Source: Bigelowiella natans CCMP2755
Lineage: Eukaryota; Protista; Cercozoa
Assembly: GCA_000320545.1 (NCBI GenBank)
Contig: ADNK01001741.1
Span: forward strand, 1-52,537
DNA: 52,537 nt
Direction of reading: 5' to 3'
In this document: positions 1,644 through 35,394 of the stretch, in pieces
Layout of the letters: every line of letters begins with the position of its first letter
Position numbering within the stretch: the stretch's first letter is position 1
Position numbers and translations under genes: made by a program
The notes under the pieces: generated by a model
What the model was told of the DNA's origin: nothing
The model's input: the letters and a program-made list of their open reading frames with translations, nothing else
Database searches by the model: none

Positions 1644-4457
1644 CTAAAAGTGAAGAGAATGTTTCCGTGGCCTTCCTTCAGCGTCATCAGAGATGAATGT
1701 GGAAGGCTGTTTCACTGTGGCAGAGTGCTTGTGACTTCTCAGGTACGTACTTTCATACCAGTCCGTGAAGAGGGTTCCATCGATGCAAATCTCAATGCCA
1801 TTGCCCGTGTGCGGAATTTCAACAGCAGGGTCTTGGTTTTGCATTCTCATCACTTTCCCAGCTTCTGTGACGAGATCGAAGAATCTTAGACAATGTCTCT
1901 TTTTCCTCTGACTTTTGAAGACTGACAACAATGATTCGGTGAAGAGTCCGTTCTGATTGTCTCCATTGTAGGCTGCATGGCCTTGACATGTGCACAGCAC
2001 ACACAAGTCAAAAACATCCTTCCACCCCAAGAATCTTATGTGTTGCTTGAGATCAATTCACCTGGCTGACAAGCGTAGAGTGTCATGCATCCTTTTAACT
2101 CTTCTTTTGCAATCTTCAAACCACTTCTCGTCAATGAACGATTCTCACTTGGCACTGAGCGTAGCAGTTCTGACACAATGGCAGATCATGGTTGTGCTGT
2201 TTGAGAGGTGGTTGATGATTTATGGATCGAAATACCTGAAGCATTAACACGACAACAATCTAGCAACAGAATCTTCACGTTCGCTTTATCCAAGCCTTGA
2301 ATTATGCTTCTTGTACTTAGTTCACTCCTTTCCAACTCCCTGAAACAAGAAAATGGAGTCATTTGAATGATGATCGAAAAGGCAATACACTCCACACCTG
2401 ACATGCTTGTAGTCATTATCAATACCCAGTAGATAGTTATCGAACGCGGTCTGATTCTTATTTGGTATTTGGACACCATGGCCGGCGAAAAATACAACTG
2501 CCAAAGATTCGCCTTTGTGGTGTAGGAGAGCATCTTCAAATTCATTGAGAGCTTTCTTCATACCTTCGCTTGAAAGGTTTTCATGATAGAAGACCTTGTA
2601 GCCGTACTCAGATCCAAACTTTTCCTCAATGGCTTTTGCATCGTTGATAGGATTTGATCCCAATCGGCCATAACTGTAGTTTCCATTACCGATGATCAAT
2701 GCAAACTTGTGTGTAATGACAGGCTTCGGCTTCTTGCTCGGCCTCACCACGGTGGCCTGTTTTGTTTCCTTGATCGCCTTTTCGAACCTTCTACGGTGCG
2801 GTTTTTTCGGAAAGTAATTCTCAATTTCGTCACTCTCCTAAGATGTTACAACAATAGAAATAATGCTAAATATTGTATCCAGAACTAACCTACATACTCA
2901 GACAATGAATGTTACCATGTCGATTAAGTCCTGGAGGAGCTCATAACCATCGCAACGCAACGTTTGGGAGTATTTAGAGAGATGGACTCTTTTTAGAAAC
3001 TGTTCAAATTCGTCATTTTCCGGCCCCCTGCTTTCCTTATCTTGCTTTGTCAATTCGGATTTTATCTGTAAAAAGAGCAGCATATTTGTGATTCTGATTA
3101 GTTGCAGTTTTTGAAGGTAACGAAATAATGACCTTCTTACTGAGACTAGAAGTGGGAGGATCTTCAACCGTAGGTGCTTTTGATCTCTTTCGATTAAACT
3201 TTGGTGGTATTGGCTTAGAAGCAGCAGCTTTCTTGGCATCCTGATCCACTTCCATCTCGTTTTCTTTCCCAGTCTGTGCTATTTTAGACTTTCAAAAAGG
3301 AACAAATTATTGTACCTCTGACATGAACACGGACAGAGGTCGTCTACCTTTTCAGCTTCGTCTTTTGTAGCATCCAATACATTCTTCTCCTCTTTAACGA
3401 TAACTTTCTCATCCTTCACCTTTTTTTTCAGAGCACTACCCTTTTGTACAGACTGCTTTTGATCATCATCGTCATCTTGATGTGTAGTGTGATCTCCACT
3501 GGCTTGATCGGGCTCGCCATCCTCCTTAACGTACTTCTCCAAGAATGCAGGCAAGATTTCTTTCACTATGTTCCTACAGGTTGCATTGAAGGTTTTAACG
3601 AACATGAAGGGTGGAGTGGAGTGGAGTGATGTGAAATTTAGATTATCATCAAATGCCTGAATTCTTTCGTTGACTTCAGGTTGTTCTCTTTGCACAGAAG
3701 ATTCCTTATCTGCAGAACATCACATCATTTCTCAGGGGAATGCGACCTACAGGTCTATGAATAATCACATACTCCTTTTTTTGTGAATTCGTTTTTTTCC
3801 ATAAGCTCGTCTCTGCGATTCTTGAATATATCCTCCATCTTCTCTTCAATCAATGCTCTCAGCTCCTCGCCAGTGGGCTGCCCCATAACTTCTTCCCGAG
3901 TAGTCTTTGTTAGATTGGACTTCAGAAAAAAAAAAACTCCGTGTTATGCTTGTACATTATTATCATAAGAGATCTTTCTCCACCTCCTTGCTCTCAGCAT
4001 ATTTGTGATTCTGATTAGTTGCAGTTTCTGAAGGTAACGTAATAATGACCTTCTTACTGAGACTAGAAGTGGGAGGATCTTCAACTGTAGGTGCTTTCGC
4101 TCTCTTTCGATTAGACTTTGGTGGCATTGACTTTGTTGTAAGTACGACCTCCTTTTTAGAGTTTTGCTTGAATGAACACTTGGGCCTTGTTTTCCCCATC
4201 GGTTCGTCTTTGTCATCGGAAGAATCCAATTCCATTGGTGCACATTTAGACTGTCGGATCAAACATTGATGGTCTTAGATTTGCATTGAAAATCGACGGT
4301 TACAACGATTCTTGAAGCAACATATAATAATATCTAACACCATAGCACGATGACTTATTTAGATTCAGACATGCACCTTTCCTTGGGAAGAAGATGCTGC
4401 ATTATCCAAAATCATTTGTCCAAGTTCTCCTTTCTTCTTTCCAGAGTATCCCTTAAT
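1644..4457 (-). CDS. Multi-exon SAM-domain + caspase-like (peptidase C14) protein, C-terminal part of the ankyrin locus
   Basis: Spliced reading gives SAM-like FEQFLKRVHLSKYSQTLRCDGYELLQDLIDM...PKKPHRRRFEKAI, then KFALIIGNGNY..NPINDAKAI..VFFAGHG (catalytic His) ..KILLLDCCR (catalytic Cys) ..GCMTLYACQPG/HAAYNGDNQNGLFTESLL; short GT-AG introns. The 5' end is truncated or rearranged at 4457. Confidence 0.88.
3078..3210. repeat. Internal duplication (~130 bp) of 3996-4125 encoding PPK(F/S)NRKR(S/A)KAPTVEDPPTSSLSKKVII(S/T)LPS(K/E)TATNQNHKYA
   Basis: Near-identical DNA and peptide in ORFs 3037..3255 and 3963..4262. Confidence 0.9.
4203..4457. repeat. ~255-bp direct duplication of 7107-7360 (exon end + intron + exon start)
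   Basis: Direct alignment by eye, roughly 90% identical; similarity ends abruptly mid-exon at both ends. Confidence 0.9.
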
Positions 4458-4740
4458 ACAAATACCAAGTAACACAAGAAAACAAACGAAGAAACTTAAG
4501 CAGTCTTTTCGATTCGGAAAAATATCATTAATGTAATGCTGTGTTATTTACGAGTGAATGTGGGAGTCTCGATCAAAATTTATTATCCCCGAATTCATAT
4601 GCATTTAAACAGCTACATTTGCGTATACTTGCAACTGCTCCGACGAGCAAAATAATCATTTTATAAAAATTTCTTCAATACTCCATGTGGAGAACATCTA
4701 CCAAATTATATTGAATTTAAATACCAAATACGTGAATACT

Positions 4741-4782
<42 letters not shown>

Positions 4783-4931
4783 TTCCTATAATATTCGCAT
4801 GCTGCTGAATGCAATGTAAAAATATAAATATGAATTGTTAATTATATCTCCCAAAAACATAGATGCGTACCATTGAAGCATATGATATAAATCTCTATGT
4901 TGATTAAGATAAATGTATCACTCATACACAC

Positions 4932-4969
<38 letters not shown>

Positions 4970-5195
4970 GACACATGTGTGTGTGTATTAACATCACCGT
5001 CACACCAGCTTATTCAACAGAAACCACAAAAATTCGAAAAATATATTCTAACAAAATATGAATTTTTGAAAATTCTGCTGTCTACAGAAAGCAGGATTTT
5101 TAGAAAAAACTTCTGTTCCCTTTTCAACCTCTGCTAATCTCAAATTCCGGTTCTAACTAATTATGTTTTTTTAGAATTCGTCAAATACGCATACA

Positions 5196-5230
<35 letters not shown>

Positions 5231-5455
5231 CGTAAATATGTATTTGCACAAGTTATGCGGGTGTGAGTCTAAACAGAACAAATACGATGATTCAAACATA
5301 AATAACTTTGTAGAGCTTAGATACATTAGGAGAAGGATATAGAGAAAGATAGTGCTTGTGTGTGTGCTTGTGTTTGTGTTTGTGTGGTTATGAGAAAAAT
5401 AATGTGCTTATGAAACGGCTACTTCTAAGCCTTAAACGGTTCTATTCGGGCCTAC

Positions 5456-5563
5456 CTGCTTCTGTGCGCATTTCAACTCCTCTTGTCTAACGAATCACGA
5501 TGTGATCATTTACACACACACACACACACAGACACACACACACACACACACACAAACACATAA

Positions 5564-5599
<36 letters not shown>

Positions 5600-6871
5600 G
5601 TATTATATCCAGACATGCATGTGTGATTGAGTGCGCGTCACAAAAATAAAGTAACATAAACGAAATGTCTTTTTCGTCTTGTCCAACTTCTTGCCTGGCA
5701 TTTCCCACAGCTTCTTGCCTGGCCTTCTTCTCAACCTCATCACTAATTTTCTGAACCTCTTCATCATTGCGGAGAAAACGAACGATATCGTTATGAGCGT
5801 TTTTGTTTGCCCAGTACAATGCGGTGTCGCCTAGTGCAAAAAATTGAACAAACGATTGCGTGGCAAAACAACAGCAGTGTCAACCACAATCAACTAGCCA
5901 ACAAATCAAGCCAAAAACATCAAAATTTTGCAACCACAAAACGCTCAAACAAACTGCTAGCAATCCGAAATAACATTGTGTATTACTTCTGCTACAACTA
6001 CATCTACTACCTCTACTACTCAAAACTATTACTAATACCAATATCACTACTGCTACCAACTACAATTACCATCACCCACCCAAAACTAAAACTAATGCCT
6101 AAATGCTAGCAGTACTGCAGCTGCTACCTACCGTTATTGTCCTTTGCCTCGATGTTTGCCTTCATACCAACCAGGTACTTGACGGTCTCAAATTGACCAT
6201 TATAAGAACCCGAAATCAACGGCGTATCACCTGGTGGTATTCGATACTATGTTAGACGCAAAAACAAAAATGACACATGTATGCAATATCAACAACCATC
6301 CTCAAACCAACATCTTATTAATTTTTGTAAAGCTAATATTACCATCTCTACTAATATCAATGCTCACTTTATCGTCCCTGCTACTCATTGCTCAATACTG
6401 TTACAACTACTACTCGTCATACTCACTACTCAAAACTATTACTAATGCTACTATCACTACTGCTACCAACTACAATTACCATCACCCACCCAACATTGCA
6501 AATACTGCCTAAAGCTAGCAATACTGCAGCTGCTACCTACCGTGTTTGTTCTTCGCCTCGATGTTTGCCTTCATACCAACCAGGTTCTTGACGATCTCCA
6601 AATGGCCATGATAAGATCCCAAAGTCAACGGCGTATCACCTGGTGGTATTCGATCCCATTATAGATGCAAAACTAATCTCAATATCACTACTGCTGCCAA
6701 CAACAATAACCAACATCCACCCAACAATGCAACTAATGCCTATGTACTAGCAATACTGCAGCTGCTACCTACCGTTATTGTCCTTTGCCTCGATGTTTGC
6801 CTTCATACCAACCAGGGACTTGACGGTCTCCAAATGGCCATTATAAGATGCCGAAATCAACTGCGTATCCC
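5456..6871 (-). CDS. Second ankyrin module: three 99-nt ankyrin exons (6773-6871, 6541-6639, 6132-6230), capping exon B from 5830 (GDTALYWANKNAHNDIVRFLRNDEEVQK...), coiled-coil-like tail; possibly a partial gene or pseudogene
   Basis: Exons are flanked by cag/gtagg and translate GDTQLISASYNGHLETVKSLVGMKANIEAKDNN, GDTPLTLGSYHGHLEIVKNLVGMKANIEAKNKH and GDTPLISGSYNGQFETVKYLVGMKANIEAKDNN. No start exon of its own was seen. Confidence 0.75.
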
Positions 6872-9800
6872 CTGGTGGTATTCGATCCCATTTTAGACGC
6901 AAAAACAAAAATGACACATGTATGCAGTATCAACAACCATCCCCAAACGAACTTCTAGTTAATATTTGTTAAACTAATATTACTACCTCTACTAATATCA
7001 ATGCTCAGTGTATCAGTCCCTGCTACTAAGTACTCAATACTGATACAACTACTACCCCTCTTTTTAACTACTCAAAACTATTACTAATGCTACTATCACT
7101 ACTGCTTTCGTCTTCATCATCGGAGGAATCCGACTCCATTGATGCACAGTCAGACTGTCAGATCAAACATTGATGGTCTTAGATTTGCATTGAAAATCGA
7201 TGGTTACAACGATTCTTGAAGCAAGATATATTGATATGTAACACCCAGCACGATGACTTATTTAGATTCAGACATGCACCTTTCCTGGGGAAGAAGATGC
7301 TGCTTTATCAAAAATCATTTGTCCAAGTTCTCCCTTCTTCTTTCTAGAGTATCCCTTAATCTTATGTTTACTGCAGCAATCATTCAGGGAAGGAACCGTT
7401 ACCGCACGCATTGCCTCTTTCTTCAAAGCCTGCACCAATTCATCTCTTTTCTCAATCATGTGAAAGGAGAGATCTCGAAATCGTTTATTAGCAAAGTCTT
7501 TGATCTCAGCAATACTTCCTTTGGAGCACAACCTTGCAAAAGTCCAAAATACTTCGCTCGAAAACGCTTGGGAAGTGTTGGTTTTTTTGGTTTTTTTGTT
7601 TTCGGCATTCATCTTTGCCGAAGCTATCTTTTTAGATGCGATCTTTTTGACACGAAGATACTGCATTATACTCTCATGACCACAATTTTCTGCCACGTCT
7701 ATTGGCGTTTGACCTGGGAGACGAACCAAAATGCAACAAACAAACAGAAACACTCATCACCACAACCATCCTTCGTACTACCAATAAACTAATATTGCTA
7801 CCTCTAATAATATCAATACTCAGTTTACCAGTCCCTGCTACTCACTACTCAATAAAGATACAACTACTACTCCTCTGATGCGATTCACTACTCAAAACTA
7901 TCACTAATACCAATATCACTACTGCTACCGACAACAATTACAATCACCGACCCAACACTGCACTGCCTAAACTCTAGCATGCTACCTACCGTCATTGTCC
8001 TTAGCCTCGATGTTTGCCTTCATACCAACCAGGTATTTGACGATCCTCCATTGGCCATTCCTAGATCCCAAATATAAAGGCGTCCGACCTGGTGTATGCG
8101 ATCCCATTTAGACACAAAAACAAAAATTACACATGTATTCATTATCAACAACCATCCTCAAACCAACATCGAATTGTTTTTTGTAAAGCTAATATTACTA
8201 CCTCTACTAATATCAGTGCTCAATGTACCAGTCCCTGCTACTCACTACCCATTACTGATACAACTACTACTCTCACTCACTACTCACACCTATAAGCAAT
8301 ACGGATATCGCTACTGTTGCTAACAACAGTAACCGACATCCCTCCCAACACTGCAACTACTGCCTGATGTGCTAGCAATGCTGCTGCTGCCTAACTACCG
8401 TTATGGTCTGATCCTCGATGTTTGCCTTCATACCAACCAGGTACTTGACGATCTCCAAATGGCCATTGTAAGATCCCGAAATCAACGCAGTCCAACCTGG
8501 TGGTATACGATCCCATTTTTGACGCATAAACAGAAATGACGCATGTATGCAATATCAACTACCATCGTTAAACCAAAATCGAATTAATTTTTGTAAAAGC
8601 AACATTACTACCTCTACTCATAGCAATGCTAAGTGCACCAGTCCCTGCTACTCACTACTTAATACTGATACAACTACTACTCCTGTTACTCACTACTCAA
8701 AACTATTACTAATACCAATATCACTACTGCTACCAACAACAATTACCATCACCCACCCAACACTGCAACTACTGCCTAAACGCTAGCAATACTGCAGCTG
8801 CTACCTACCGTTCATGTCCTTCGCCTCGATGTTTGCCTTCATACCAACCAGGTACTTGACAATCTCCAATTGGCCATTATAAGATCCCAAAATCAACGGC
8901 GTATTACCTGGTGGTATTCGATCCCATTTTAGACGCAAGAATAACAATGACACATGTATGCAATATCAACAACCATCCACACACCTACATCGAATTAATT
9001 GTTGTAAAGCTAATATTACTACCTCTACTAATATCACATGCCAAAGTGTACCAGTCCCTACTACTCACTACTCAATACTGATACAACTACTACTCCTCTT
9101 ACTAACTACTCAATGCTGTTATTAATACCAATATCACTACTGCTACCCACAACAATTACTATTACTCACCCAACATTGCAACTACTGCCTAAACGCTAGC
9201 AATGCTGCAGCTGCTATCTACCGTATTTGTTATTCGCCTCGATGTTTGCCTTCATACCAACCAGGTACTTGACGATCTCCAAATGGCCATTACAAGATCC
9301 CAAAGTCAACGGCGCATTACCTGGTGGTATTCGATCCCGTTTTAGCCGCAAAATGTCAATGACGCATGTATGCAATATCAACTACCATCGTTAAACCAAC
9401 ATCGAATTGTTTTTTGTAAAGCTAATATTACTACCTCTACTAATATCAATGCTAAGTGTACCATTCCCTGCTACTCACTACCCAATACTAACACAACTAC
9501 TACTCCTCTTACTCACTACTCAAACCTGTTACGAATACCAATATCGCTACTGCTGCCAACAACAATAACCAACATCCACCCAACACTGCAACTGCTGCCT
9601 GAACGCTAGCAATACTGCAGTAGCTAACTACCGTTTTTGTTCTTCGCCTCGATGTTTGCCTTCATACCAACCAGGTACTTGACGATCTCCAAATGGCTAT
9701 TCGAAGAACCCGAAATCAACGCCGTCCAACCTGGTGGTACACGATCCCATTTTTGACGCATGAACAGAAATGACACATGTATGCAATATATTCAACCATC

Positions 9801-10415
9801 CTCAAACCAAAATCGAATTAATTTTTGTAAAACCAATATTAATCTATCTACTCATAGCATGCTACTCACTACTCAATGCTGATACAACTACTACTCCTCT
9901 TACTCACTGTTCAAAACTATTACTGATACCAGTATCACTACTGCTACCGGCAACAATTACCAACATCCACCCAATACTGCAACTGCTGCCTGAACGCTAG
10001 CAATACTTCAGCTGTTACCCACCGTTATTGTCCTTCGCCTCGATGTTTGCCTTCATACCAATCAAGTACTTGACGGTCTCTAATTGTCCATCATGAGATC
10101 CCGAAATCAACGGCGTCCGACCTGGTGGTATGCGATCCCATGTCAGACGCAAAAACAGCAATGACACATGCACGCAACATCAACAACCATCCACACACCT
10201 ACATCTAACTGATGTTTGTAAAACCAATATCAATGCATCTACTCATGTCACATGCCAAGTGTACCAGTCCCTGCTACTCACTACTCAACACTGATACAAC
10301 TACTACTCCTCTTACTCACTACTCAAACCCATTGCTAATACCAATATCACTACTGCTGCCAACAACAATTACCATCACCCACCCAACACTACAACTACTG
10401 TCTAAATGCTAGCAA
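5960..10415. repeat. Tandem array of ~410-bp intron+ankyrin-exon cassettes (9 units in two blocks)
   Basis: Exon starts at 6132, 6541, 6773, 7990, 8399, 8809, 9222, 9632, 10023 (spacing mostly 391-413; one 232). The 24-mer CCTCGATGTTTGCCTTCATACCAA is identical in all nine and the introns are homologous. Confidence 0.95.
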
Positions 10416-10568
10416 TGAACAATCTTAAATGCTTCTGATGGGAATGCTACTTACGACTGCTGCTTACTCACCCTGCTTGTTCCTCGCCTCAATATTTGCC
10501 TTTTCCTCTATTAAACGTTTCAAAAGAGGAAGCCCATTTGGGTCCACTGCGGCGTCGAAGATGTCCAT
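7068..10568 (-). CDS. Ankyrin-repeat protein: start exon 10568-10472, six single-repeat exons, capping exon A 7713-7280 with a HeH/SAP-like motif, then a truncated exon from 7154
   Basis: ATG at 10568 gives MDIFDAAVDPNGLPLLKRLIEEKANIEARNKQG|gtgagt. Repeat exons: 10023-10121, 9632-9730, 9222-9320, 8809-8907, 8399-8496 (98 nt), 7990-8088, consensus GxTPLxxGSxxGHLEIVKYLVGMKANIEAK(D/N)xx. Cap GQTPIDVAENCGHESIMQYLR is followed by VTVPSLNDCCSKHKIKGYSRKKKGELGQMIF. Confidence 0.88.
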
Positions 10569-15760: not shown

Positions 15761-16777
15761 ATGAAGTTTGGGAAGATCCTTCGCGAAAATAGCAAGGAAG
15801 GATGGTTGTACTTAGATTACGATAACCTTAAGAAAATCATCAAGGATGGAGACTCATCTTCAAAGAGTTTTAAGAAGTTACTCTTGACTGACATTGTACA
15901 CGTCAATCAATTCTTTGAGAAGGCGAAGATGAAAATCGTTGACGAGGCCAGCAAGGACAAGAATTATCCTGAATTTTCTAAGCTAAAGGAACTTCACCAA
16001 TATGCTGTCTTGAACTACCTGGCTGTATTGAAAATTCTTAAAAAGCATGACAAGCACTACTTTCCGGCTATAAGGGAAGAGGTTCTAGAGGGGTTCATGC
16101 AAATGCCATTATATAAAGCCGTGAATTCACCCATACTATTCCAAAGCCTGGAAAAATCGGGATCTCTTCCCACGGGCCCCGACTGTCCGATCTGCCTTGA
16201 GCCTTCCATTACCCCTGTTACTCTAGAATGTGGTCATCAGTTTTGCTGGACATGTCTGTGGAACGGGGATATGGAGAATCACGTTGCTTGCCCGTTGTGC
16301 CGAAAATCACAAACTCTGAACCCTTCAGAAATCAACATCAACGACATTCTCGGGAAATTTTCAAAGAAGTATTTTCCCCGTTCCGTGGAAAAGAAGGAGC
16401 CCATGCCGGAAGGGAGCAGGGATTCTATGACTAAAGCTAACAATGAATCATTCCTTGCGGTTTCAAACGATATGCAAAAGATAACAAACGATATGCAAGA
16501 TATAAGTCTAGATGTCCGCACGAGGGAATCCAAAATCAAGATTGATTACAATCCACGAAAGTCGCGCAAGCCTAATCATGTTGGATCGCTTAATGAGCTG
16601 CGATATGAACTACACAAGGATCTATGTGCAAGGACAATGCTGGAAACGAGTATGGTTCCTGTAAAACAAGAAGTTCGTTCAGTCCGATCAATGACATGGA
16701 CGGCCCCTTCCTCACCATTAATGTCCACATTCAGTGAACAAGAGGATGACGACTGTATATTCGACCTAGAAATGTAA
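15761..16777 (+). CDS. SPX-RING E3 ubiquitin ligase (NLA/BAH1-like), single exon
   Basis: SPX motifs MKFGK..YLDYDNLKKII and LNYLAVLKILKKHDK; C3HC4 RING CPICLEP..ECGHQFCWTC..CPLCR. Confidence 0.92.
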   Translation: MKFGKILRENSKEGWLYLDYDNLKKIIKDGDSSSKSFKKLLLTDIVHVNQFFEKAKMKIVDEASKDKNYPEFSKLKELHQYAVLNYLAVLKILKKHDKHYFPAIREEVLEGFMQMPLYKAVNSPILFQSLEKSGSLPTGPDCPICLEPSITPVTLECGHQFCWTCLWNGDMENHVACPLCRKSQTLNPSEININDILGKFSKKYFPRSVEKKEPMPEGSRDSMTKANNESFLAVSNDMQKITNDMQDISLDVRTRESKIKIDYNPRKSRKPNHVGSLNELRYELHKDLCARTMLETSMVPVKQEVRSVRSMTWTAPSSPLMSTFSEQEDDDCIFDLEM

Positions 16778-31624: not shown

Positions 31625-32680
31625 TCGTGTGCGGAGCATCGAACCTGACAGTCTTTTCCGCATCACCGACGTATTTGCTCAGGATCTCTGGCCCGCTCAC
31701 TATGCTAACTGACCTATGATACGAAGATATGTACATGCAATACATGAGAGATAGAGAGAGAGTGCCCTCCTCGCGCCCACAGGGAGGCAGAGTGGTAGCA
31801 GGAGAAGAAGATGCTTTTGTGACAAAACATGGGGAAAACAGGACGAATGCTACTACTTTGAGTTGAGAGATCTGGCGATTTCTCTCGCCAGCAACGTCTT
31901 GCCACAGCCTGGGGGACCGTGCTGTTTTTATGCAGCATTGCTGTCAATTCGCTCCTTAAGTTTGAAAACAGCACCTGTACCGCTACAGCACCAAGTAGAG
32001 AACATACAAGTGCAAAGGTTGCCGCTAATGGTTCTACTGCTATAACTACCAAGAGCAGTCCCCTGACGTGACCGATGCCTTGGATTTATATCATTGTCCG
32101 TGCAACGACGATTTCGTATGCGACATAGAAAAGCACCAAACGTCCGTTAATATTCACATGCCAAACCCAATGAGCTAACTTCATCTAAAATCCCATATCT
32201 CCTCTCCCACCTCAAGACCTACCCAGCTCTCTCGCTAGATCTGGAAGCAGGACTCTGCAGCAGGGAGGGGGCAAATCGAAAAAGCATCAACACATTAAAC
32301 AACATCATTCTCGGGTTCGTGAGCATGCTGGCTCGTCTGCTCTATTTCCTCCGTTTATTTACTAACAGCAACGATCAGTGCTGACTACAACAATAACAAC
32401 AACTACTACTACTACTACCACTACTAATTACTACTGCAAGACATACCTCGACATAAGAATCCTCCTAGTGATGTTTTGCAGCGTTGAACTATGGCCGCCA
32501 ACACGTAGAGATATCTGGTGCAGGAACACAACTTATCCTTAATGACATATAGTACACTGATACACTGAACCAAAGGCCATGTAAGGCAAATGCCCAGCGA
32601 ACAGCGCTGCAAAAGAAAGGAAAGGCGAAAAGCGACTCTGGTGCTTGGTTGGAGCTCTGCCGGCGTACAATGCACATGTT

Positions 32681-32742
<62 letters not shown>

Positions 32743-33554
32743 GTGTGTGTGTGTGTGTATTGCCTTGTCGATATCGATCTGGGGAGATTGGGGAGATCGG
32801 TTGCTCCATGATGCATTCCGATGTTTTTCGTTCGTTTCTTCGTCTTTCAGGATCAAAGGTTGCGCAAGCTCTGCTCCCCCAAAAGCCAAGCCCTCCCCTC
32901 TCCACTTCGGGTTTTTTTTGCCTAAGTCCAGGAAATCAGCGGGGGTTCTCTCACTGCGCCGCAAGCTGCCGCAACTGTGGCCATGGCAAACGTCTATATC
33001 CTTCTCATTCATTGGCTCTTGTGCTTGTTGGTTGCTCTGCTTGGAGTCGGCTGGGGGATCCACCATCGTCATCATCGTCATCATCCTCTCCATGTCTAGT
33101 GTAAGAGACTTTGTGTGGTTTGGAGATAGAGTCACAGGCCTAAAAACAGCCAAACAAACGACGAGTGAAAATCCCAATGAGAGCGCGATGTATGAACCGT
33201 AGCAAACATCGGCATTTTATATACGCATGGCTGCACTATGTCTGTGTGTGTGCGTGCGTGTTTGTGTGTTTGTGTGTGTGTGTGTGTGATCGAAAGAGGC
33301 TCTATTTCCAAACCTGCCAGGGGGCGTGATCAACACTTCCAGCAAGACAATGGGACCCTGAGAGCCAAAGGCACCCGTGTTGGTCAAAATGGCGGAATGA
33401 CATGGATGTTTCGGGCTCCAAGAGATATGGAGAGCGATGAGAAAGAGAGAGGAGAGCATACAGTCGCGCAGTTGTTGTTAGATAGACACCGTTGAGTCAG
33501 ATTCGGTTGATATTTCCCTTAAAACACACATACACAAACACACACAAACACACA

Positions 33555-33589
<35 letters not shown>

Positions 33590-33652
33590 TTAGATCTAAT
33601 GTTAACAGACGCAAATGAAGTTGAGACATGAATCATTGGTCCCCCCTCTGGT

Positions 33653-33691
<39 letters not shown>

Positions 33692-33843
33692 TATTTCTTA
33701 TCTGCTACCTCATCGGTCCCCCATAAAATACCCAAGGTACAGGATTTGCCTCCAAGCTTCGTCGTGAAACCTTCGTGATTGCCATTTGATATGCTGTTTA
33801 TTTGTCTTCTTGTGATCAAATTTCGCTCGCGCTCCCCCCCCCA

Positions 33844-33886
<43 letters not shown>

Positions 33887-35394
33887 ATGTGTCATTTTGG
33901 CGCGAAATGTACCTCGGTCGTTATGCCTCCTGCCATCTATCAACATCACGCAATTAGCCATGTTGTAAAAGATGAAAGAGATGAAAATTAATGATCGATA
34001 TAGACTGTTTGCGACAGAGAGGGCGCCATCATTGGAAAATACTCAAATCATCTATTACGCATCCGTGGGCCCAATGCTTTCTCAGCACGAGTAAATCATT
34101 CCTTAACACTACCCGCATCTACAACTACCCGAGAATAGATAAGCGACCGCACACGCGCTCTTGTGCCGGCGCCACTGACCATCTTCTGCATAAGAAACGA
34201 GCCTGAATAAATGGTTATTATGAAAAAAAAAAAGCAGCCATTGGAGCTGTGCAATCATATCCCTATAGAGTGTGGTAATGAGACACGGCATCACTGATTA
34301 GTCATGAATGCTTCGACAGCTGTGTGGTTATCACCATCGCCATCATCATCATTATCCTCATCATCATTGTCGCGGTCGTCGTTATATGCACTAGCACAGA
34401 TAAACCTGGGGGATAATGCCGAATGACCGTTGTTGCGATAGGAACAACGAGGGCCTGCACTTTGAGATTCTCATTAGATATGAGCTGCATAAAATAGGTT
34501 CGTTTCAACTCTTATTTAGCATCCTCCCCAAGTCGCACCTCGCATGTCAGTCACCGAAGATGGTAAAGACGGCGAACAACAAGAGATAAGGAACAAAATC
34601 GCCATAATCATAAACTCACAAATATAGCCCTCGGGTTCCTACAAATCTAGGCTGGTGCCAATTTGCACTTACTACCTCGATCGTTGCGGGCTCTGGAGAA
34701 GACAAGCAAAACTTCCAGAAAGGGTGCTCAAGATTCAGTCTAACGTCTTGGAGCCGATTCTGCAACTTTGCCGTTTCGTTTCCATCCTAAATTGCGCGTG
34801 GGTGCGGTCAAATACGCATATTCAGCAGCTAAATTAGCAAATATTACATCGCCGTGCATGCACGATGTTGTCACGAGAAAATGACCCCATAGTTTCATTA
34901 CCATCCAATCAACTTTCCCCCCCACGAGAGCTTCGACGGCCTGTGTAAATATTCAAGAATTCTCCTTTTAAATTGTTTGGAACAACTCTGAACCGACCAC
35001 ACGCGGTAATTTTTTACCCTTTTATTGCTCGCATCCTTGGTTGTTACAGCTTGGGTTACGAGCCGTGCGTAGACGCTTTCTTCGCCCTCCCCCTATATAT
35101 AGAGCGAGAGGGTGATTATATGAGCATTTTGACTCACGGACACACGAAAAGCAAGCTTACATATGATGAAGGGGCCGGCAGAATTTGATTTGAAGCAATG
35201 GATTTGCATCGTCGCCTACTACGCATCGGCTGTGCGCCACGTCCCAAGCTTTCCATGCCACGCTGCCAATACCCCTTGACCGCACGCTTGGTGACCGACC
35301 TCCCACCAAGTAGGCGACGATGCAAATTGCGGTGTGAGAGCGCCGCCGTAGACGCTATCATGGCCATGATCACCAACATGTGAGAGAGGGGCAT
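29412..35394 (-). CDS. NSF/Sec18-like single-AAA-domain ATPase with signal peptide + transit-peptide-like leader
   Basis: Walker A GPPGCGKTLLAREIA (~31900), IVSGPEILSKYVGDAEKTVR, Walker B GLHVIIMDEFDSVFK, SVCNQLL|AKMDGVQQLDNILVIG|LTNRPELIDPALLRPGRFEV, YSGADIAGLVRS, stop 29412-29414. Leader MPLSHMLVIMAMIASTAALSHRNLHRRLLGGRS.. Confidence 0.85.

What the first reader, a model, noticed from the sequence alone, without database searches (positions are those of the whole stretch)
1644..10568. Ankyrin sensor - HeH/SAP - SAM - caspase architecture with intact catalytic dyad
Seen: the ankyrin gene's capping exon A and following exon (7107-7360) are homologous to the 5' end of the SAM-caspase gene (4203-4457), implying the ancestral or spliced gene was ANK(n)-HeH-like-linker-SAM-caspase. 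The protease retains AGHG and DCCR and the YA.PG / NG.FT C-terminal motifs of peptidase C14. Known: SAM domains oligomerise and caspase-fold proteases are often proximity-activated death/immune effectors. Inference: a variable sensor coupled to an oligomerisation module and a protease, functionally like an NLR/inflammasome but without a STAND NTPase.
Basis: partly seen in the sequence, partly recalled or inferred. Interest (0 to 1): 0.8.

Follow-up and report, generated by a model that had tools for sequence, protein, structure and literature searches.

The report
Ankyrin–SAM–paracaspase-like gene, rearranged copy
This stretch of the alga Bigelowiella natans holds a rearranged copy of a lineage-specific gene family that joins a variable ankyrin-repeat array, a SAM oligomerisation domain and an intact MALT1-like (caspase-fold) protease, a combination not described for algal caspase relatives.

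Summary
The 255-bp duplication is real at about 93% identity. PF00656 matches strongly, and His (FFAGHG), Cys (LLDCCR), YACQPG and NGLFT are all present.

The window is nuclear DNA of Bigelowiella natans. At least three paralogs elsewhere in the genome (C891, C1331, C3197) carry ANK–(HeH-like)–linker–SAM–protease contiguously with clean splice sites. A public intronless cDNA contig (L022/P0153) reads the C1331 copy as one ORF running from ankyrin repeats to the protease.

SAM is confirmed by sequence (SAMSN1, E=3e-5) and by fold. The HeH motif is only weakly supported. The protease is closest to MALT1 paracaspase and to bacterial-type C14, not to true caspases or metacaspases.

The window copy is a recombinant. 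The 3' part of an ANK-only gene (three ANK exons, another cap, 1.2 kb of flank) sits inside the former HeH/linker region. A second cDNA (L023) follows the route ANK → cap 5830 → mini-exon → truncated HeH exon 4451 → 4250 → SAM → protease, not the proposed 7280→4250 splice. Its 5' half is only 92–98.6% identical to the window.

The NLR-like sensor function remains inference. The scan had already noted paralogs of this family on other pieces of this genome.

The parts
10472..10568 (-). Start exon (ATG at 10568): N-terminal ankyrin cap MDIFDAAVDPNGLPLLKRLIEEKANIEARNKQ, ends in phase 1 with donor GTGAGT
   Evidence: Sequence read. Homologous exon in C891 at 90% DNA identity.
7990..10121 (-). Ankyrin cassette array A. 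Intact 99-nt phase 1-1 exons at 10121-10023, 9730-9632, 9320-9222, 8907-8809 and 8088-7990, in a 410-bp tandem exon+intron unit
   Evidence: TRF period 410, 6.5 copies, 81% matches. Exon scan with AG/GT flanks.
8391..8488 (-). Defective ankyrin exon: 98 nt (1-nt deletion before the donor), which would break the frame if included
   Evidence: Sequence read.
7280..7713 (-). C-terminal ankyrin cap (GQTPIDVAENCGHESIMQYLR), K-rich stretch, helical region and HeH-like (Rho_N/LEM/SAP-like) motif; 434 nt, phase 1 to 0
   Evidence: Pfam Rho_N E=0.0025, below cut-off. AF2 model mean pLDDT 75. VIA Z 4.3 to Rho N-terminal domain, 3.5 SAP, 3.3 LEM, all over residues 98-144. Paralogs at C891 (85%) and C1331 (56%).
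7068..7154 (-). Exon after the HeH exon. It starts like the linker exon (SDCASMESDSSDDEDE), then runs into ankyrin-intron-like DNA and stops (TAG 7070-7068). The upstream ORF therefore ends as ANK-HeH without SAM or protease
   Evidence: Sequence read. Breakpoint at about 7107. Homology of 7106-5999 to the ANK array of C2949.
7107..7360 (-). Copy 1 of the 255-bp direct repeat (end of HeH exon, intron, start of linker exon)
   Evidence: Alignment A1.
4203..4457 (-). Copy 2 of the 255-bp direct repeat
   Evidence: Alignment A1.
4458..7106 (-). Inserted block homologous to the 3' part of ANK-only family genes (e.g. C2949): ANK exons 6871-6773, 6639-6541 and 6230-6132, alternative cap exon, and 1.2 kb of microsatellite-rich flank. 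Homology ends at 4455-4458
   Evidence: blastn to C2949 at 80-91% identity, ending at window 4455.
5695..5830 (-). Alternative C-terminal ankyrin cap exon (GDTALYWANKNAHNDIVRFLRNDEE...). In the cDNA it is spliced on from an internal site that reads GC in the window
   Evidence: cDNA L023 nt 142-291, 96% identity.
5456..5486 (-). 31-nt mini-exon (QEELKCAQKQ) in what is 3' flank in ANK-only paralogs; AG acceptor, GT donor
   Evidence: cDNA L023 nt 277-310, 97% identity.
4377..4451 (-). Truncated HeH exon (GYSGKKKGELGQMILDNAASSSQGK). It uses an AG (4453-4452) that is internal coding sequence in the full exon, 4 nt inside the duplication breakpoint
   Evidence: cDNA L023 nt 307-384, 97% identity.
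4050..4250 (-). Linker exon 1 (SKCAPMELDSSDDKDEP...KSMPPKSNRKRAKAPTVEDPPTSSLSKK), 201 nt, phase 0-0, open in the window
   Evidence: cDNA L023 nt 380-586, 98.6% identity, with a 1-nt insertion in the cDNA.
3133..3886 (-). Optional or alternative 5' exons of public model Bigna1 88961 (3886-3769, 3709-3348, 3288-3133). The first two are foreign to the family (92% copy at C3254:12163-12576). The third is a second copy of the linker. All are skipped in cDNA L023
   Evidence: P0151 sequence, copy at C3254, linker duplication.
2916..3065 (-). SAM domain, first half (helices 1-3): ...NDEFEQFLKRVHLSKYSQTLRCDGYELLQDLIDM
   Evidence: SAMSN1 SAM (1v38) E=3.3e-5. AF2 pLDDT 85-96 over five helices. Foldseek top 50 all SAM domains, rmsd 1.2-2 A.
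2398..2837 (-). SAM second half (ESDEIENYFPKKPHRRRFEKAIKE), K/P-rich spacer and p20 part of the C14 protease with catalytic His (codon 2480-2478)
   Evidence: Pfam PF00656 E=5e-19. Family profile against PDB gives MALT1 E=1.2e-5.
2236..2339 (-). Protease exon with LLDCCR. The catalytic Cys codon 2254-2252 aligns with MALT1 LLDMCR
2062..2169 (-). Protease exon ending in YACQPG
1644..1981 (-). Last protease exon (NGLFTESL...), stop at 1646-1644
   Evidence: Pfam PF00656 positions 162-210.

Best explanation
The region is one locus of a Bigelowiella natans-specific multigene family. Its full-length products read: N-cap, ankyrin repeats (in this subfamily one repeat per 99-nt symmetric exon), C-cap plus helical/HeH-like region, acidic/basic linker, SAM domain, and a paracaspase-like C14 protease with an intact His-Cys dyad. 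That much is shown.

The window copy has been rearranged. The 3' part of an ANK-only family gene (intron, three ANK exons, a different cap, 1.2 kb of flank) was inserted into the HeH/linker region with a 255-bp duplication. The result is (A) an upstream ORF, ANK-HeH, that stops at 7068, and (B) a downstream chain of ANK exons: cap 5830, mini-exon 5486, truncated HeH exon 4451, linker 4250, SAM, protease. Chain B is open in all phases in the window, and a cDNA contig has exactly these junctions.

The mechanism is inferred. The hypervariable concave face of the ankyrin array binds a ligand or substrate. The SAM domain self-associates. The protease domains brought together become active, as MALT1 and initiator caspases do on induced proximity. 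They then cleave after a basic residue, because two of the three acidic S1 residues of MALT1 are conserved. The likely context is defence or regulated cell death.
For: Organism and public models: (eukprot Bigelowiella natans, jgi/Bigna1 88961, 90136, 69701, 79088).

Paralogs: the HeH exon and protease lie 0.8-1 kb apart on the same strand in C891, C1331 and C2135. In C891 every exon has AG/GT and compatible phases from the start exon to the stop. In C3197 a single 601-aa open frame holds about 15 ANK repeats plus the linker, followed by SAM and protease exons.

Transcripts: L022 (2625 bp, intronless, 99-100% identical to C1331/C1332 exons) encodes P0153. P0153 is one 692-aa ORF with Ank_2 E=1.5e-28 and Peptidase_C14 E=2e-23. 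L023 is collinear with window exons 6583...1533.

SAM. Protease type: MALT1 is the best solved match, with a DxCR motif.

ANK variability is concentrated at exon positions 2, 6, 7, 10, 11, 32 and 33, which correspond to DARPin binding positions. In window exons, surface positions show 173 non-synonymous against 11 synonymous codon differences; framework positions show 82 against 69.

Insertion origin. Catalytic residues are conserved in all paralog products.
Against: No experiment bears on function. Ligand, oligomerisation, activity and P1 preference are all inferred.

The 5' 586 nt of cDNA L023 is only 92-98.6% identical to the window, whereas its 3' part is 99-100% identical. Another contig of the same sample (L024) matches the genome at 99-100%. 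The 5' half may therefore come from an unassembled twin locus or allele, or the contig may be a de Bruijn chimera. L025 shares the same 5' 867 nt but continues into the C1432 fragment.

That cDNA also carries a 1-nt insertion in the linker that breaks the ORF. The public EST-extended model starts at 3886 without ANK. No transcript shows which start exon feeds chain B.

The surface positions for the dN/dS-like count were chosen after seeing the data. HeH support is weak: Pfam is below cut-off, Z is 3.3-4.3, and only one of five AF2 models was confident.
Confidence: 0.6

Rival explanations
1. Tankyrase-like regulatory enzyme rather than an immune sensor. The ankyrin array recruits cellular substrates, SAM polymerisation boosts catalysis, and the protease carries out limited proteolysis in ordinary signalling or protein turnover.
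For: The order ANK-SAM-catalytic domain is that of tankyrase. Tankyrase SAM and SAM-PARP filament structures are among the fold matches of the SAM model (8w23, 8aly, 5jti, 5jrt). MALT1 itself is a signalling protease, not a death executioner.
Against: Housekeeping recruiters are usually conserved. Here the family is confined to one lineage in a search of 1.84 billion representatives. The putative binding positions are the most variable. Copies are rearranged, truncated or fragmented.
Confidence: 0.25
2. At this locus there is no joined product. The rearrangement split the gene into a truncated ANK-HeH gene (10568-7068) and an ANK-less SAM-protease gene that starts at 3886, as in the public model. 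The ANK exons 6871-6132 and the cap are dead remnants.
For: The stop at 7068 follows the breakpoint directly. EST-extended model Bigna1 88961 starts at 3886. One ANK exon is frame-broken. The only cDNA with ANK attached differs by 1.4-8% in that part and has a frameshift.
Against: The junctions cap->mini-exon->truncated HeH exon->4250 exist in a cDNA. They can only come from a locus with this very rearrangement. In the window all these exons are open and in compatible phases, and all flanks are AG/GT apart from one GC donor.
Confidence: 0.3
3. The chimeric arrangement is an assembly artefact of repeated ANK/HeH sequence in a fragmented draft (3736 contigs).
For: The region is repeat-rich. Near-identical SAM exon copies exist on C1432 and C1688. 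The cDNA 5' half does not match perfectly.
Against: The two 255-bp copies differ by about 7%, so they are not one sequence placed twice. The right-hand junction is crossed by spliced cDNA. The inserted block is collinear with C2949 over 2.6 kb right up to the breakpoint.
Confidence: 0.08

Closest known systems
MALT1 / paracaspases (MEROPS C14B), especially 'type 2' paracaspases and eukaryotic 'metacaspase-like proteases'
   Same: Best solved-structure match of the family profile (E=1.2e-5, p20 region). The H-G and LLD-x-C-R motifs are shared. The Asp aligned with MALT1 PLVD and the Asp two residues before the Cys are conserved. Activation by oligomerisation is the known mode for MALT1.
   Different: There is no death domain and no Ig domains; ANK, HeH-like and SAM domains lie N-terminal instead. 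Identity is only about 25-30%. Phylogenetic placement was not tested. Reviews state that algal p20-only homologues carry no extra domains (PMC5756287).
Bacterial orthocaspases with repeat domains (TPR, Sel1, WD40, MORN)
   Same: The nearest sequence relatives outside B. natans are bacterial-type C14 proteins (35-50% identity in p20, LDACR motif) that carry repeat or other accessory domains. The logic is the same: a repeat module joined to a C14 protease.
   Different: In bacteria the accessory domains are usually C-terminal. None of the 145 nearest representatives has SAM or ANK by family HMMs. The gene here is an intron-rich eukaryotic gene.
Tankyrase (ANK repeat clusters - SAM - PARP)
   Same: The domain order is the same: ankyrin array, SAM, C-terminal enzyme. 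The SAM model superposes on tankyrase SAM.
   Different: The catalytic domain is a cysteine protease, not a PARP. The ANK repeats are unrelated in detail. No homology is implied.
NLR / inflammasome-type receptors
   Same: As a concept: a variable repeat sensor, an oligomerisation module and a caspase-fold effector.
   Different: No STAND NTPase (NACHT/NB-ARC) is found in any product scanned. There are no death-fold adaptors. The sensor is N-terminal ANK rather than C-terminal LRR. It is not a member.

Membership tests
Peptidase C14 (caspase/hemoglobinase fold) | Match to PF00656 above the gathering score | tested here: met
   P0151 scores 109.4 bits against a cut-off of 21.4, positions 2-210 of 233. 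Exon 2837-2398 alone scores 69.3 bits.
Peptidase C14 (caspase/hemoglobinase fold) | Catalytic His-Cys dyad in the conserved motifs | tested here: met
   FFAGHG and LLDCCR are present in the window and in all paralog products. Both align with MALT1 H415/C464 motifs.
Paracaspase-like / DxCR group | DxCR around the catalytic Cys, rather than DxCH (metacaspase) or QACxG (caspase) | tested here: met
   LLDCCR aligned to MALT1 LLDMCR. Motif rule from PMC5756287, which also warns that many prokaryotic homologues share it.
Paracaspase-like / DxCR group | Phylogenetic grouping with paracaspases rather than with bacterial orthocaspases | not tested
   No tree was built. The nearest sequences by HMMER are bacterial-type C14 proteins.
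Paracaspase-like / DxCR group | Acidic S1 pocket (MALT1 D365, D462, E500) giving Arg/Lys specificity | tested here: inconclusive
   The first two Asp are conserved by alignment. The E500 equivalent is not conserved in the window product (YACQPGHAAY) but is Glu in the C3197 product. The residue numbering comes from my own knowledge.
Metacaspase types I-III | DxCH(S)G motif and a p10 domain with the Ca-binding 280-loop | tested here: not met
   The motif is DCCR. Choi & Berges report no type I or type III metacaspase in B. natans (PMC3734836).
SAM domain | Sequence match to SAM models or SAM proteins | tested here: met
   PDB 1v38 (SAMSN1 SAM) E=3.3e-5 with P0151 and 4.5e-5 with the family profile. 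Pfam SAM_1, SAM_2 and SAM_TNK hit at E about 1e-3 in paralog products, just below cut-off.
SAM domain | Five-helix SAM fold | tested here: met
   AF2 model of P0008 has pLDDT 85-96 over residues 21-89 with five helices. All 50 best Foldseek matches are SAM domains, rmsd 1.2-2 A over 55-67 residues.
SAM domain | Head-to-tail polymerisation | not testable with these tools
   Needs SEC-MALS or EM of the recombinant domain.
Ankyrin repeats | Match to the Pfam Ank families | tested here: met
   P0153 Ank_2 E=1.5e-28. L023 upstream ORF Ank_4 E=1.8e-13. C3197 ORF has 15 repeats.
HeH superfold (SAP / LEM / Rho_N) | Helix-extended-helix motif recognised by model or by fold | tested here: inconclusive
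   Rho_N E=3.5e-4 to 0.15 in four paralogs, always below the 24.9-bit cut-off. VIA Z 4.3 (Rho 1a62 residues 1-47), 3.5 (SAP 2do1) and 3.3 (LEM 2odc), all on model residues 98-144. Foldseek found nothing significant.
NLR / STAND receptors | Central NACHT or NB-ARC NTPase | tested here: not met
   No such Pfam hit in P0151, P0153, P0003 or the exon ORFs.

The most novel reading that the evidence does not exclude
The one-exon-per-repeat ankyrin arrays are a diversifying receptor repertoire of a unicellular alga. Symmetric 99-nt cassettes can be duplicated, skipped or recombined without breaking the frame. Whole arrays are moved between effector tails by recombination, as caught in the act in this window. 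SAM-driven polymerisation then fires a paracaspase-like protease as an NTPase-free innate-immune or cell-death switch, for example against the giant viruses and virophages known from this genome.
Probability: 0.2. Interest if true: 0.85.

Novelty: new variant of a known kind. Interest (0 to 1): 0.6.

Why it matters
Caspase-fold proteases of algae are described as bare p20 domains with unknown regulation (PMC5756287). B. natans was reported to lack type I and type III metacaspases (PMC3734836).

This genome instead holds an expressed family in which such a protease is tied to a variable binding array and an oligomerisation domain. That gives a concrete, testable model for how a protist controls a death or signalling protease. 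It is also a rare eukaryotic counterpart of the bacterial pairing of a repeat domain with an orthocaspase.

The window adds an evolutionary snapshot. It shows domain shuffling by recombination, with a cryptic acceptor inside a former exon and new introns carved out of a former terminal exon and its flank.

Public gene models split all these genes, so the architecture is invisible in current annotations.

Tried and rejected
Searches that found nothing or little:
- Word search with the C3197 linker region found nothing.
- Word search with the HeH region of P0153, for proteins of 380-1211 aa, found only the C1331 cluster. No public long model of C891 or of the window's upstream ORF exists there.
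- A scan of metagenome contigs with the HeH alignment found no relative.
- Pfam on separate exon halves cannot see SAM. This was solved with public spliced products and cDNA loci.
- Foldseek on the HeH-exon model gave nothing significant.
I replaced it with local family HMMs.
- An Atlas search with P0153 was unavailable. With P0003 it gave only C14 clusters, none with ANK or SAM.

Ideas considered and rejected:
- Strain divergence as the reason for the imperfect 5' match of L023. This fails because L024 of the same sample is 99-100% identical to the genome.
- C1432 as the source of that 5' part. This fails because 8.4 kb upstream of its SAM exon holds no match.
- Fusion of the ANK-only gene on C2949 to the kinase gene downstream of it. 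The public paralog model P0155 starts after the ANK gene and has no ANK.

Step left out: I did not build, search or fold a joined spliced model of the window's own gene. Joined sequence came only from public cDNA contigs and public models, given by reference.
Full report
**What the DNA is.** The window is eukaryotic, with short GT-AG introns and (AC)n/(AT)n microsatellites. It belongs to a 91.4-Mb assembly. Exact-sequence look-up of the public products of this locus and its paralogs names the organism as Bigelowiella natans. The models are jgi/Bigna1 88961, 90136, 69701 and 79088. Everything discussed lies on the minus strand.

**Check of the observation.**
- Window 7360-7107 and 4457-4203 are about 93% identical, with sharp ends.
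- The segment covers the last 78 nt of the HeH-like exon, its intron and the first ~48 nt of the linker exon.
- The protease is real and intact. PF00656 scores 109 bits on public product P0151.
- The motifs FFAGHG, LLDCCR, YACQPG and NGLFT are present.
- Four protease exons have canonical splice sites that a 100%-identical cDNA confirms.
- The ankyrin exons are 99 nt, phase 1-1, one repeat each, in a 410-bp exon+intron tandem unit.
- The start exon begins at 10568.

**Is the joined architecture real? Paralogs.** A six-frame search of the genome with PF00656 and with the HeH exon finds paralogs in which the HeH exon lies 0.8-1 kb upstream of the protease on the same strand (C891, C1331, C2135).
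- On C891 the whole chain is contiguous within 5.3 kb: start exon, six ANK cassettes, cap/HeH exon, linker, SAM (two exons), and four protease exons. Every boundary is AG/GT, the phases are compatible and there are no stops.
- On C3197 a single 601-aa open frame holds about 15 ankyrin repeats of another subtype and runs straight into the linker. SAM and protease exons follow, and there is no HeH exon.
- C2601 has a protease preceded by a different N-terminal region, with a 691-aa ANK frame further upstream.
- Fragments of the SAM exons lie on C1432 and C1688.

**Is the joined architecture real? Transcripts.** Two JGI/IMG contigs lack the genomic introns and are therefore cDNA-derived.
- L022 (2625 bp) matches C1331/C1332 exons at 99-100%. 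It encodes P0153, a single 692-aa ORF with at least four ankyrin repeats, cap, HeH-like region, acidic repeat, SAM and protease. Its Pfam hits are Ank_2 1.5e-28 and Peptidase_C14 2e-23.
- The public JGI models cut these genes into pieces: P0003 starts inside the HeH exon and P0002 starts inside SAM.
Both a transcript and paralogs join them.

**Domains.**
- SAM is split by a phase-0 intron, so exon-wise Pfam scans miss it.
  - The public products give SAMSN1 SAM (1v38) at E=3.3e-5, and 4.5e-5 with the family profile.
  - Pfam SAM_1, SAM_2 and SAM_TNK hit at about 1e-3.
  - An AF2 model of P0008 has five helices at pLDDT 85-96. Its 50 best Foldseek matches are all SAM domains, tankyrase and SARM1 among them.
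- The protease profile's best solved match is the MALT1 paracaspase domain (E=1.2e-5). HG aligns with HG and LLDCCR with LLDMCR.
  - It has DxCR, not the metacaspase DxCH or the caspase QACxG.
  - Two of the three acidic S1 residues of MALT1 are conserved by alignment, so a basic P1 is the likelier specificity. This is inference.
- The HeH-like motif is weak but consistent.
  - Pfam Rho_N hits are always below cut-off (E=3.5e-4 to 0.15).
  - On one confident AF2 model out of five, VIA matches of Z 4.3, 3.5 and 3.3 to Rho N-terminal, SAP and LEM domains all fall on the same residues 98-144.
  - Foldseek found nothing.

**Anatomy of this locus.** I set the window against C891 and against the ANK-only gene on C2949.
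- The window carries an insertion from 7106 to 4458. It consists of ankyrin-intron sequence, three intact ANK exons (6871, 6639, 6230), a different C-terminal cap exon (5830) and 1.2 kb of microsatellite-rich flank.
- This block is 80-91% identical to C2949 and several other ANK-only loci. The homology ends at 4455-4458, exactly at the edge of the 255-bp repeat.
- On C2949 that point is followed, after about 75 bp, by an unrelated coiled-coil/kinase gene. In its home context the block is therefore the 3' end of a gene.
- Upstream of the insertion, the ORF reads start exon, five good ANK exons (plus one 98-nt frame-breaking exon at 8488-8391) and the full cap/HeH exon 7713-7280. It then enters exon 7154-7068. 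That exon begins like the linker but runs into intron-like DNA and stops.
- Downstream, a second, smaller rearrangement duplicated the linker (4166-3996 against 3243-3079). It also inserted two exons whose larger one has a 92% copy on C3254. The EST-extended public model 88961 (P0151) starts there, at 3886.

**The cDNA that crosses the junction.** L023 (1838 bp) is collinear with the window: 6583-6546, 6230-6132, 5830-5695, 5486-5456, 4451-4377, 4250-4050, 3065-2916, 2837-2398, 2339-2236, 2169-2062 and 1981 onwards.
- The route leaves the alternative cap exon at an internal site (GC in the window) and uses a 31-nt mini-exon in former 3' flank.
- It then enters the truncated HeH exon at an AG that is ordinary coding sequence (ATT AAG|GGA) in the full exon, 4 nt inside the breakpoint. 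It skips 3995-3256.
- In the window every exon of this chain is open and the phases fit, by my exon-by-exon phase count.
That step is left out on purpose.

**Caveats on L023.**
- Its 3' 1250 nt are 99-100% identical to the window, but the first 586 nt are only 92-98.6% identical.
- This is not strain divergence, because L024 from the same sample matches C2135 at 99-100%.
- A sister contig, L025, shares the first 867 nt and then follows the C1432 fragment. C1432 has no matching upstream exons.
- L023 also has a 1-nt insertion in the linker that breaks its ORF, so the gene caller split it.
- The likeliest reading is a very recent twin or allele of this rearranged locus that is absent from the assembly, partly merged with the window's transcript by the assembler.
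- The junctions prove that a locus with this exact rearrangement is transcribed and spliced in this way. They do not prove that the window's own copy yields a full ANK-SAM-protease protein. I put that at about 0.6.

**Variability of the sensor part.** I compared 20 cassettes from the window, C891 and C1331.
- Entropy peaks at exon positions 2, 6, 7, 10, 11, 32 and 33. These correspond to positions 5, 9, 10, 13, 14, 2 and 3 of the canonical repeat, which form the target-binding face randomised in DARPins.
- The framework (VKYLVGMKANIEAK) is nearly invariant.
- Among window exons, surface positions show 173 non-synonymous against 11 synonymous codon differences. Framework positions show 82 against 69.
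- The position classes were set after inspection, so this is indicative only.

**Distribution.** HMMER of exon 2837-2398 against 1.84 billion cluster representatives gives five close clusters, all from B. natans. The score then drops to E=1e-18 (35-50% identity), to bacterial-type C14 proteins with SPOR, TPR, Fib_succ and similar domains.
- None of the next 145 representatives has the family's SAM or ANK by local HMMs.
- Atlas neighbours are C14 clusters with Sel1, TPR, MORN, NHL or FGE-sulfatase domains, none with ANK or SAM.
- Some 6,500 weaker hits were not examined, so ANK-C14 fusions elsewhere are not excluded.

**Literature.**
- Choi & Berges found no type I or type III metacaspases in B. 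natans (PMC3734836).
- Klemenčič & Funk state that only prokaryotic orthocaspases carry additional domains and that algal metacaspase-like proteases consist of the p20 domain only (PMC5756287).
- I found no paper describing ANK-SAM-C14.
- Two earlier follow-ups of this scan reached the same architecture on other pieces of this genome. I checked those paralogs myself (C1331, C3197).

**Mechanism and verdict.**
- Shown: the architecture, its expression in at least one paralog, intact catalytic residues, the SAM fold, a variable ANK face, and the recombinant nature of this copy.
- Inferred: binding by the ANK face, SAM self-association, proximity activation of the protease, basic P1, and a role in defence or cell death.
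- The tankyrase-like reading (substrate recruitment, regulatory proteolysis) is the main functional rival. It cannot be separated from the sensor reading by sequence alone.
- It is not an NLR, since it has no STAND NTPase. It should not be called a caspase in the strict sense.
- Novelty: a new variant of a known kind, namely a C14 protease with a new eukaryotic N-terminal architecture. As a window-specific bonus, it is a clear case of domain shuffling with newly recruited splice sites.

Noticed in passing
G000:C2135 about 31,800-34,200 (L013 local 4813-7164): Upstream of the C2135 HeH-SAM-protease paralog lies a run of intronless ORFs of viral flavour. One resembles a GIY-YIG-like protein (MTTRKVYFYRLTCLNTRETYVGST...). 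Others are coiled-coil or basic proteins. This may be an integrated virus- or virophage-like element. I only observed it.
   Followed up: no
G000:C2949:16000-31373 (L029, L030): An ANK-only cassette gene ends in a cap exon with a hydrophobic tail (...DLSFMLLYFCDM...). A coiled-coil plus protein-kinase gene follows (637-aa frame, Pkinase E=1e-26; paralog model Bigna1 144035, 1042 aa). The window's inserted block is homologous to this ANK gene's 3' end.
   Followed up: partly
window 3282-3695 and G000:C3254:12163-12576: The large optional exon in front of the SAM exon has a 92% identical copy in another contig and no Pfam family. It is a piece of another gene captured in the linker region.
   Followed up: partly
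G000:C1432:28483-29029 and G000:C1688:9310-10107: These are orphan copies of the SAM exons. On C1432 the copy is 99% identical and diverges after ...KPKPVITH (public model 79088). On C1688 there are several tandem partial copies.
   Followed up: partly
window 8391-8488: One ankyrin cassette is 98 nt instead of 99. It would shift the frame unless it is skipped.
   Followed up: yes
window 15761-16777 (+): A 338-aa intronless ORF has an SPX-like N-terminus (MKFGKILRENSKEGW...) and a RING-type C3HC4 motif (CPICLE...CGHQFCWTC...CPLC). It looks like an ordinary SPX-RING protein.
   Followed up: no
L022 nt 1-388 and G000:C1332:6011-6664: The 5' end of the C1331 cDNA maps to the end of contig C1332 and contains stops, perhaps from a retained intron. 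It places C1332 directly upstream of C1331. The cDNA has fewer ANK repeats than the genome has cassettes, which could mean either exon skipping or assembler collapse.
   Followed up: partly
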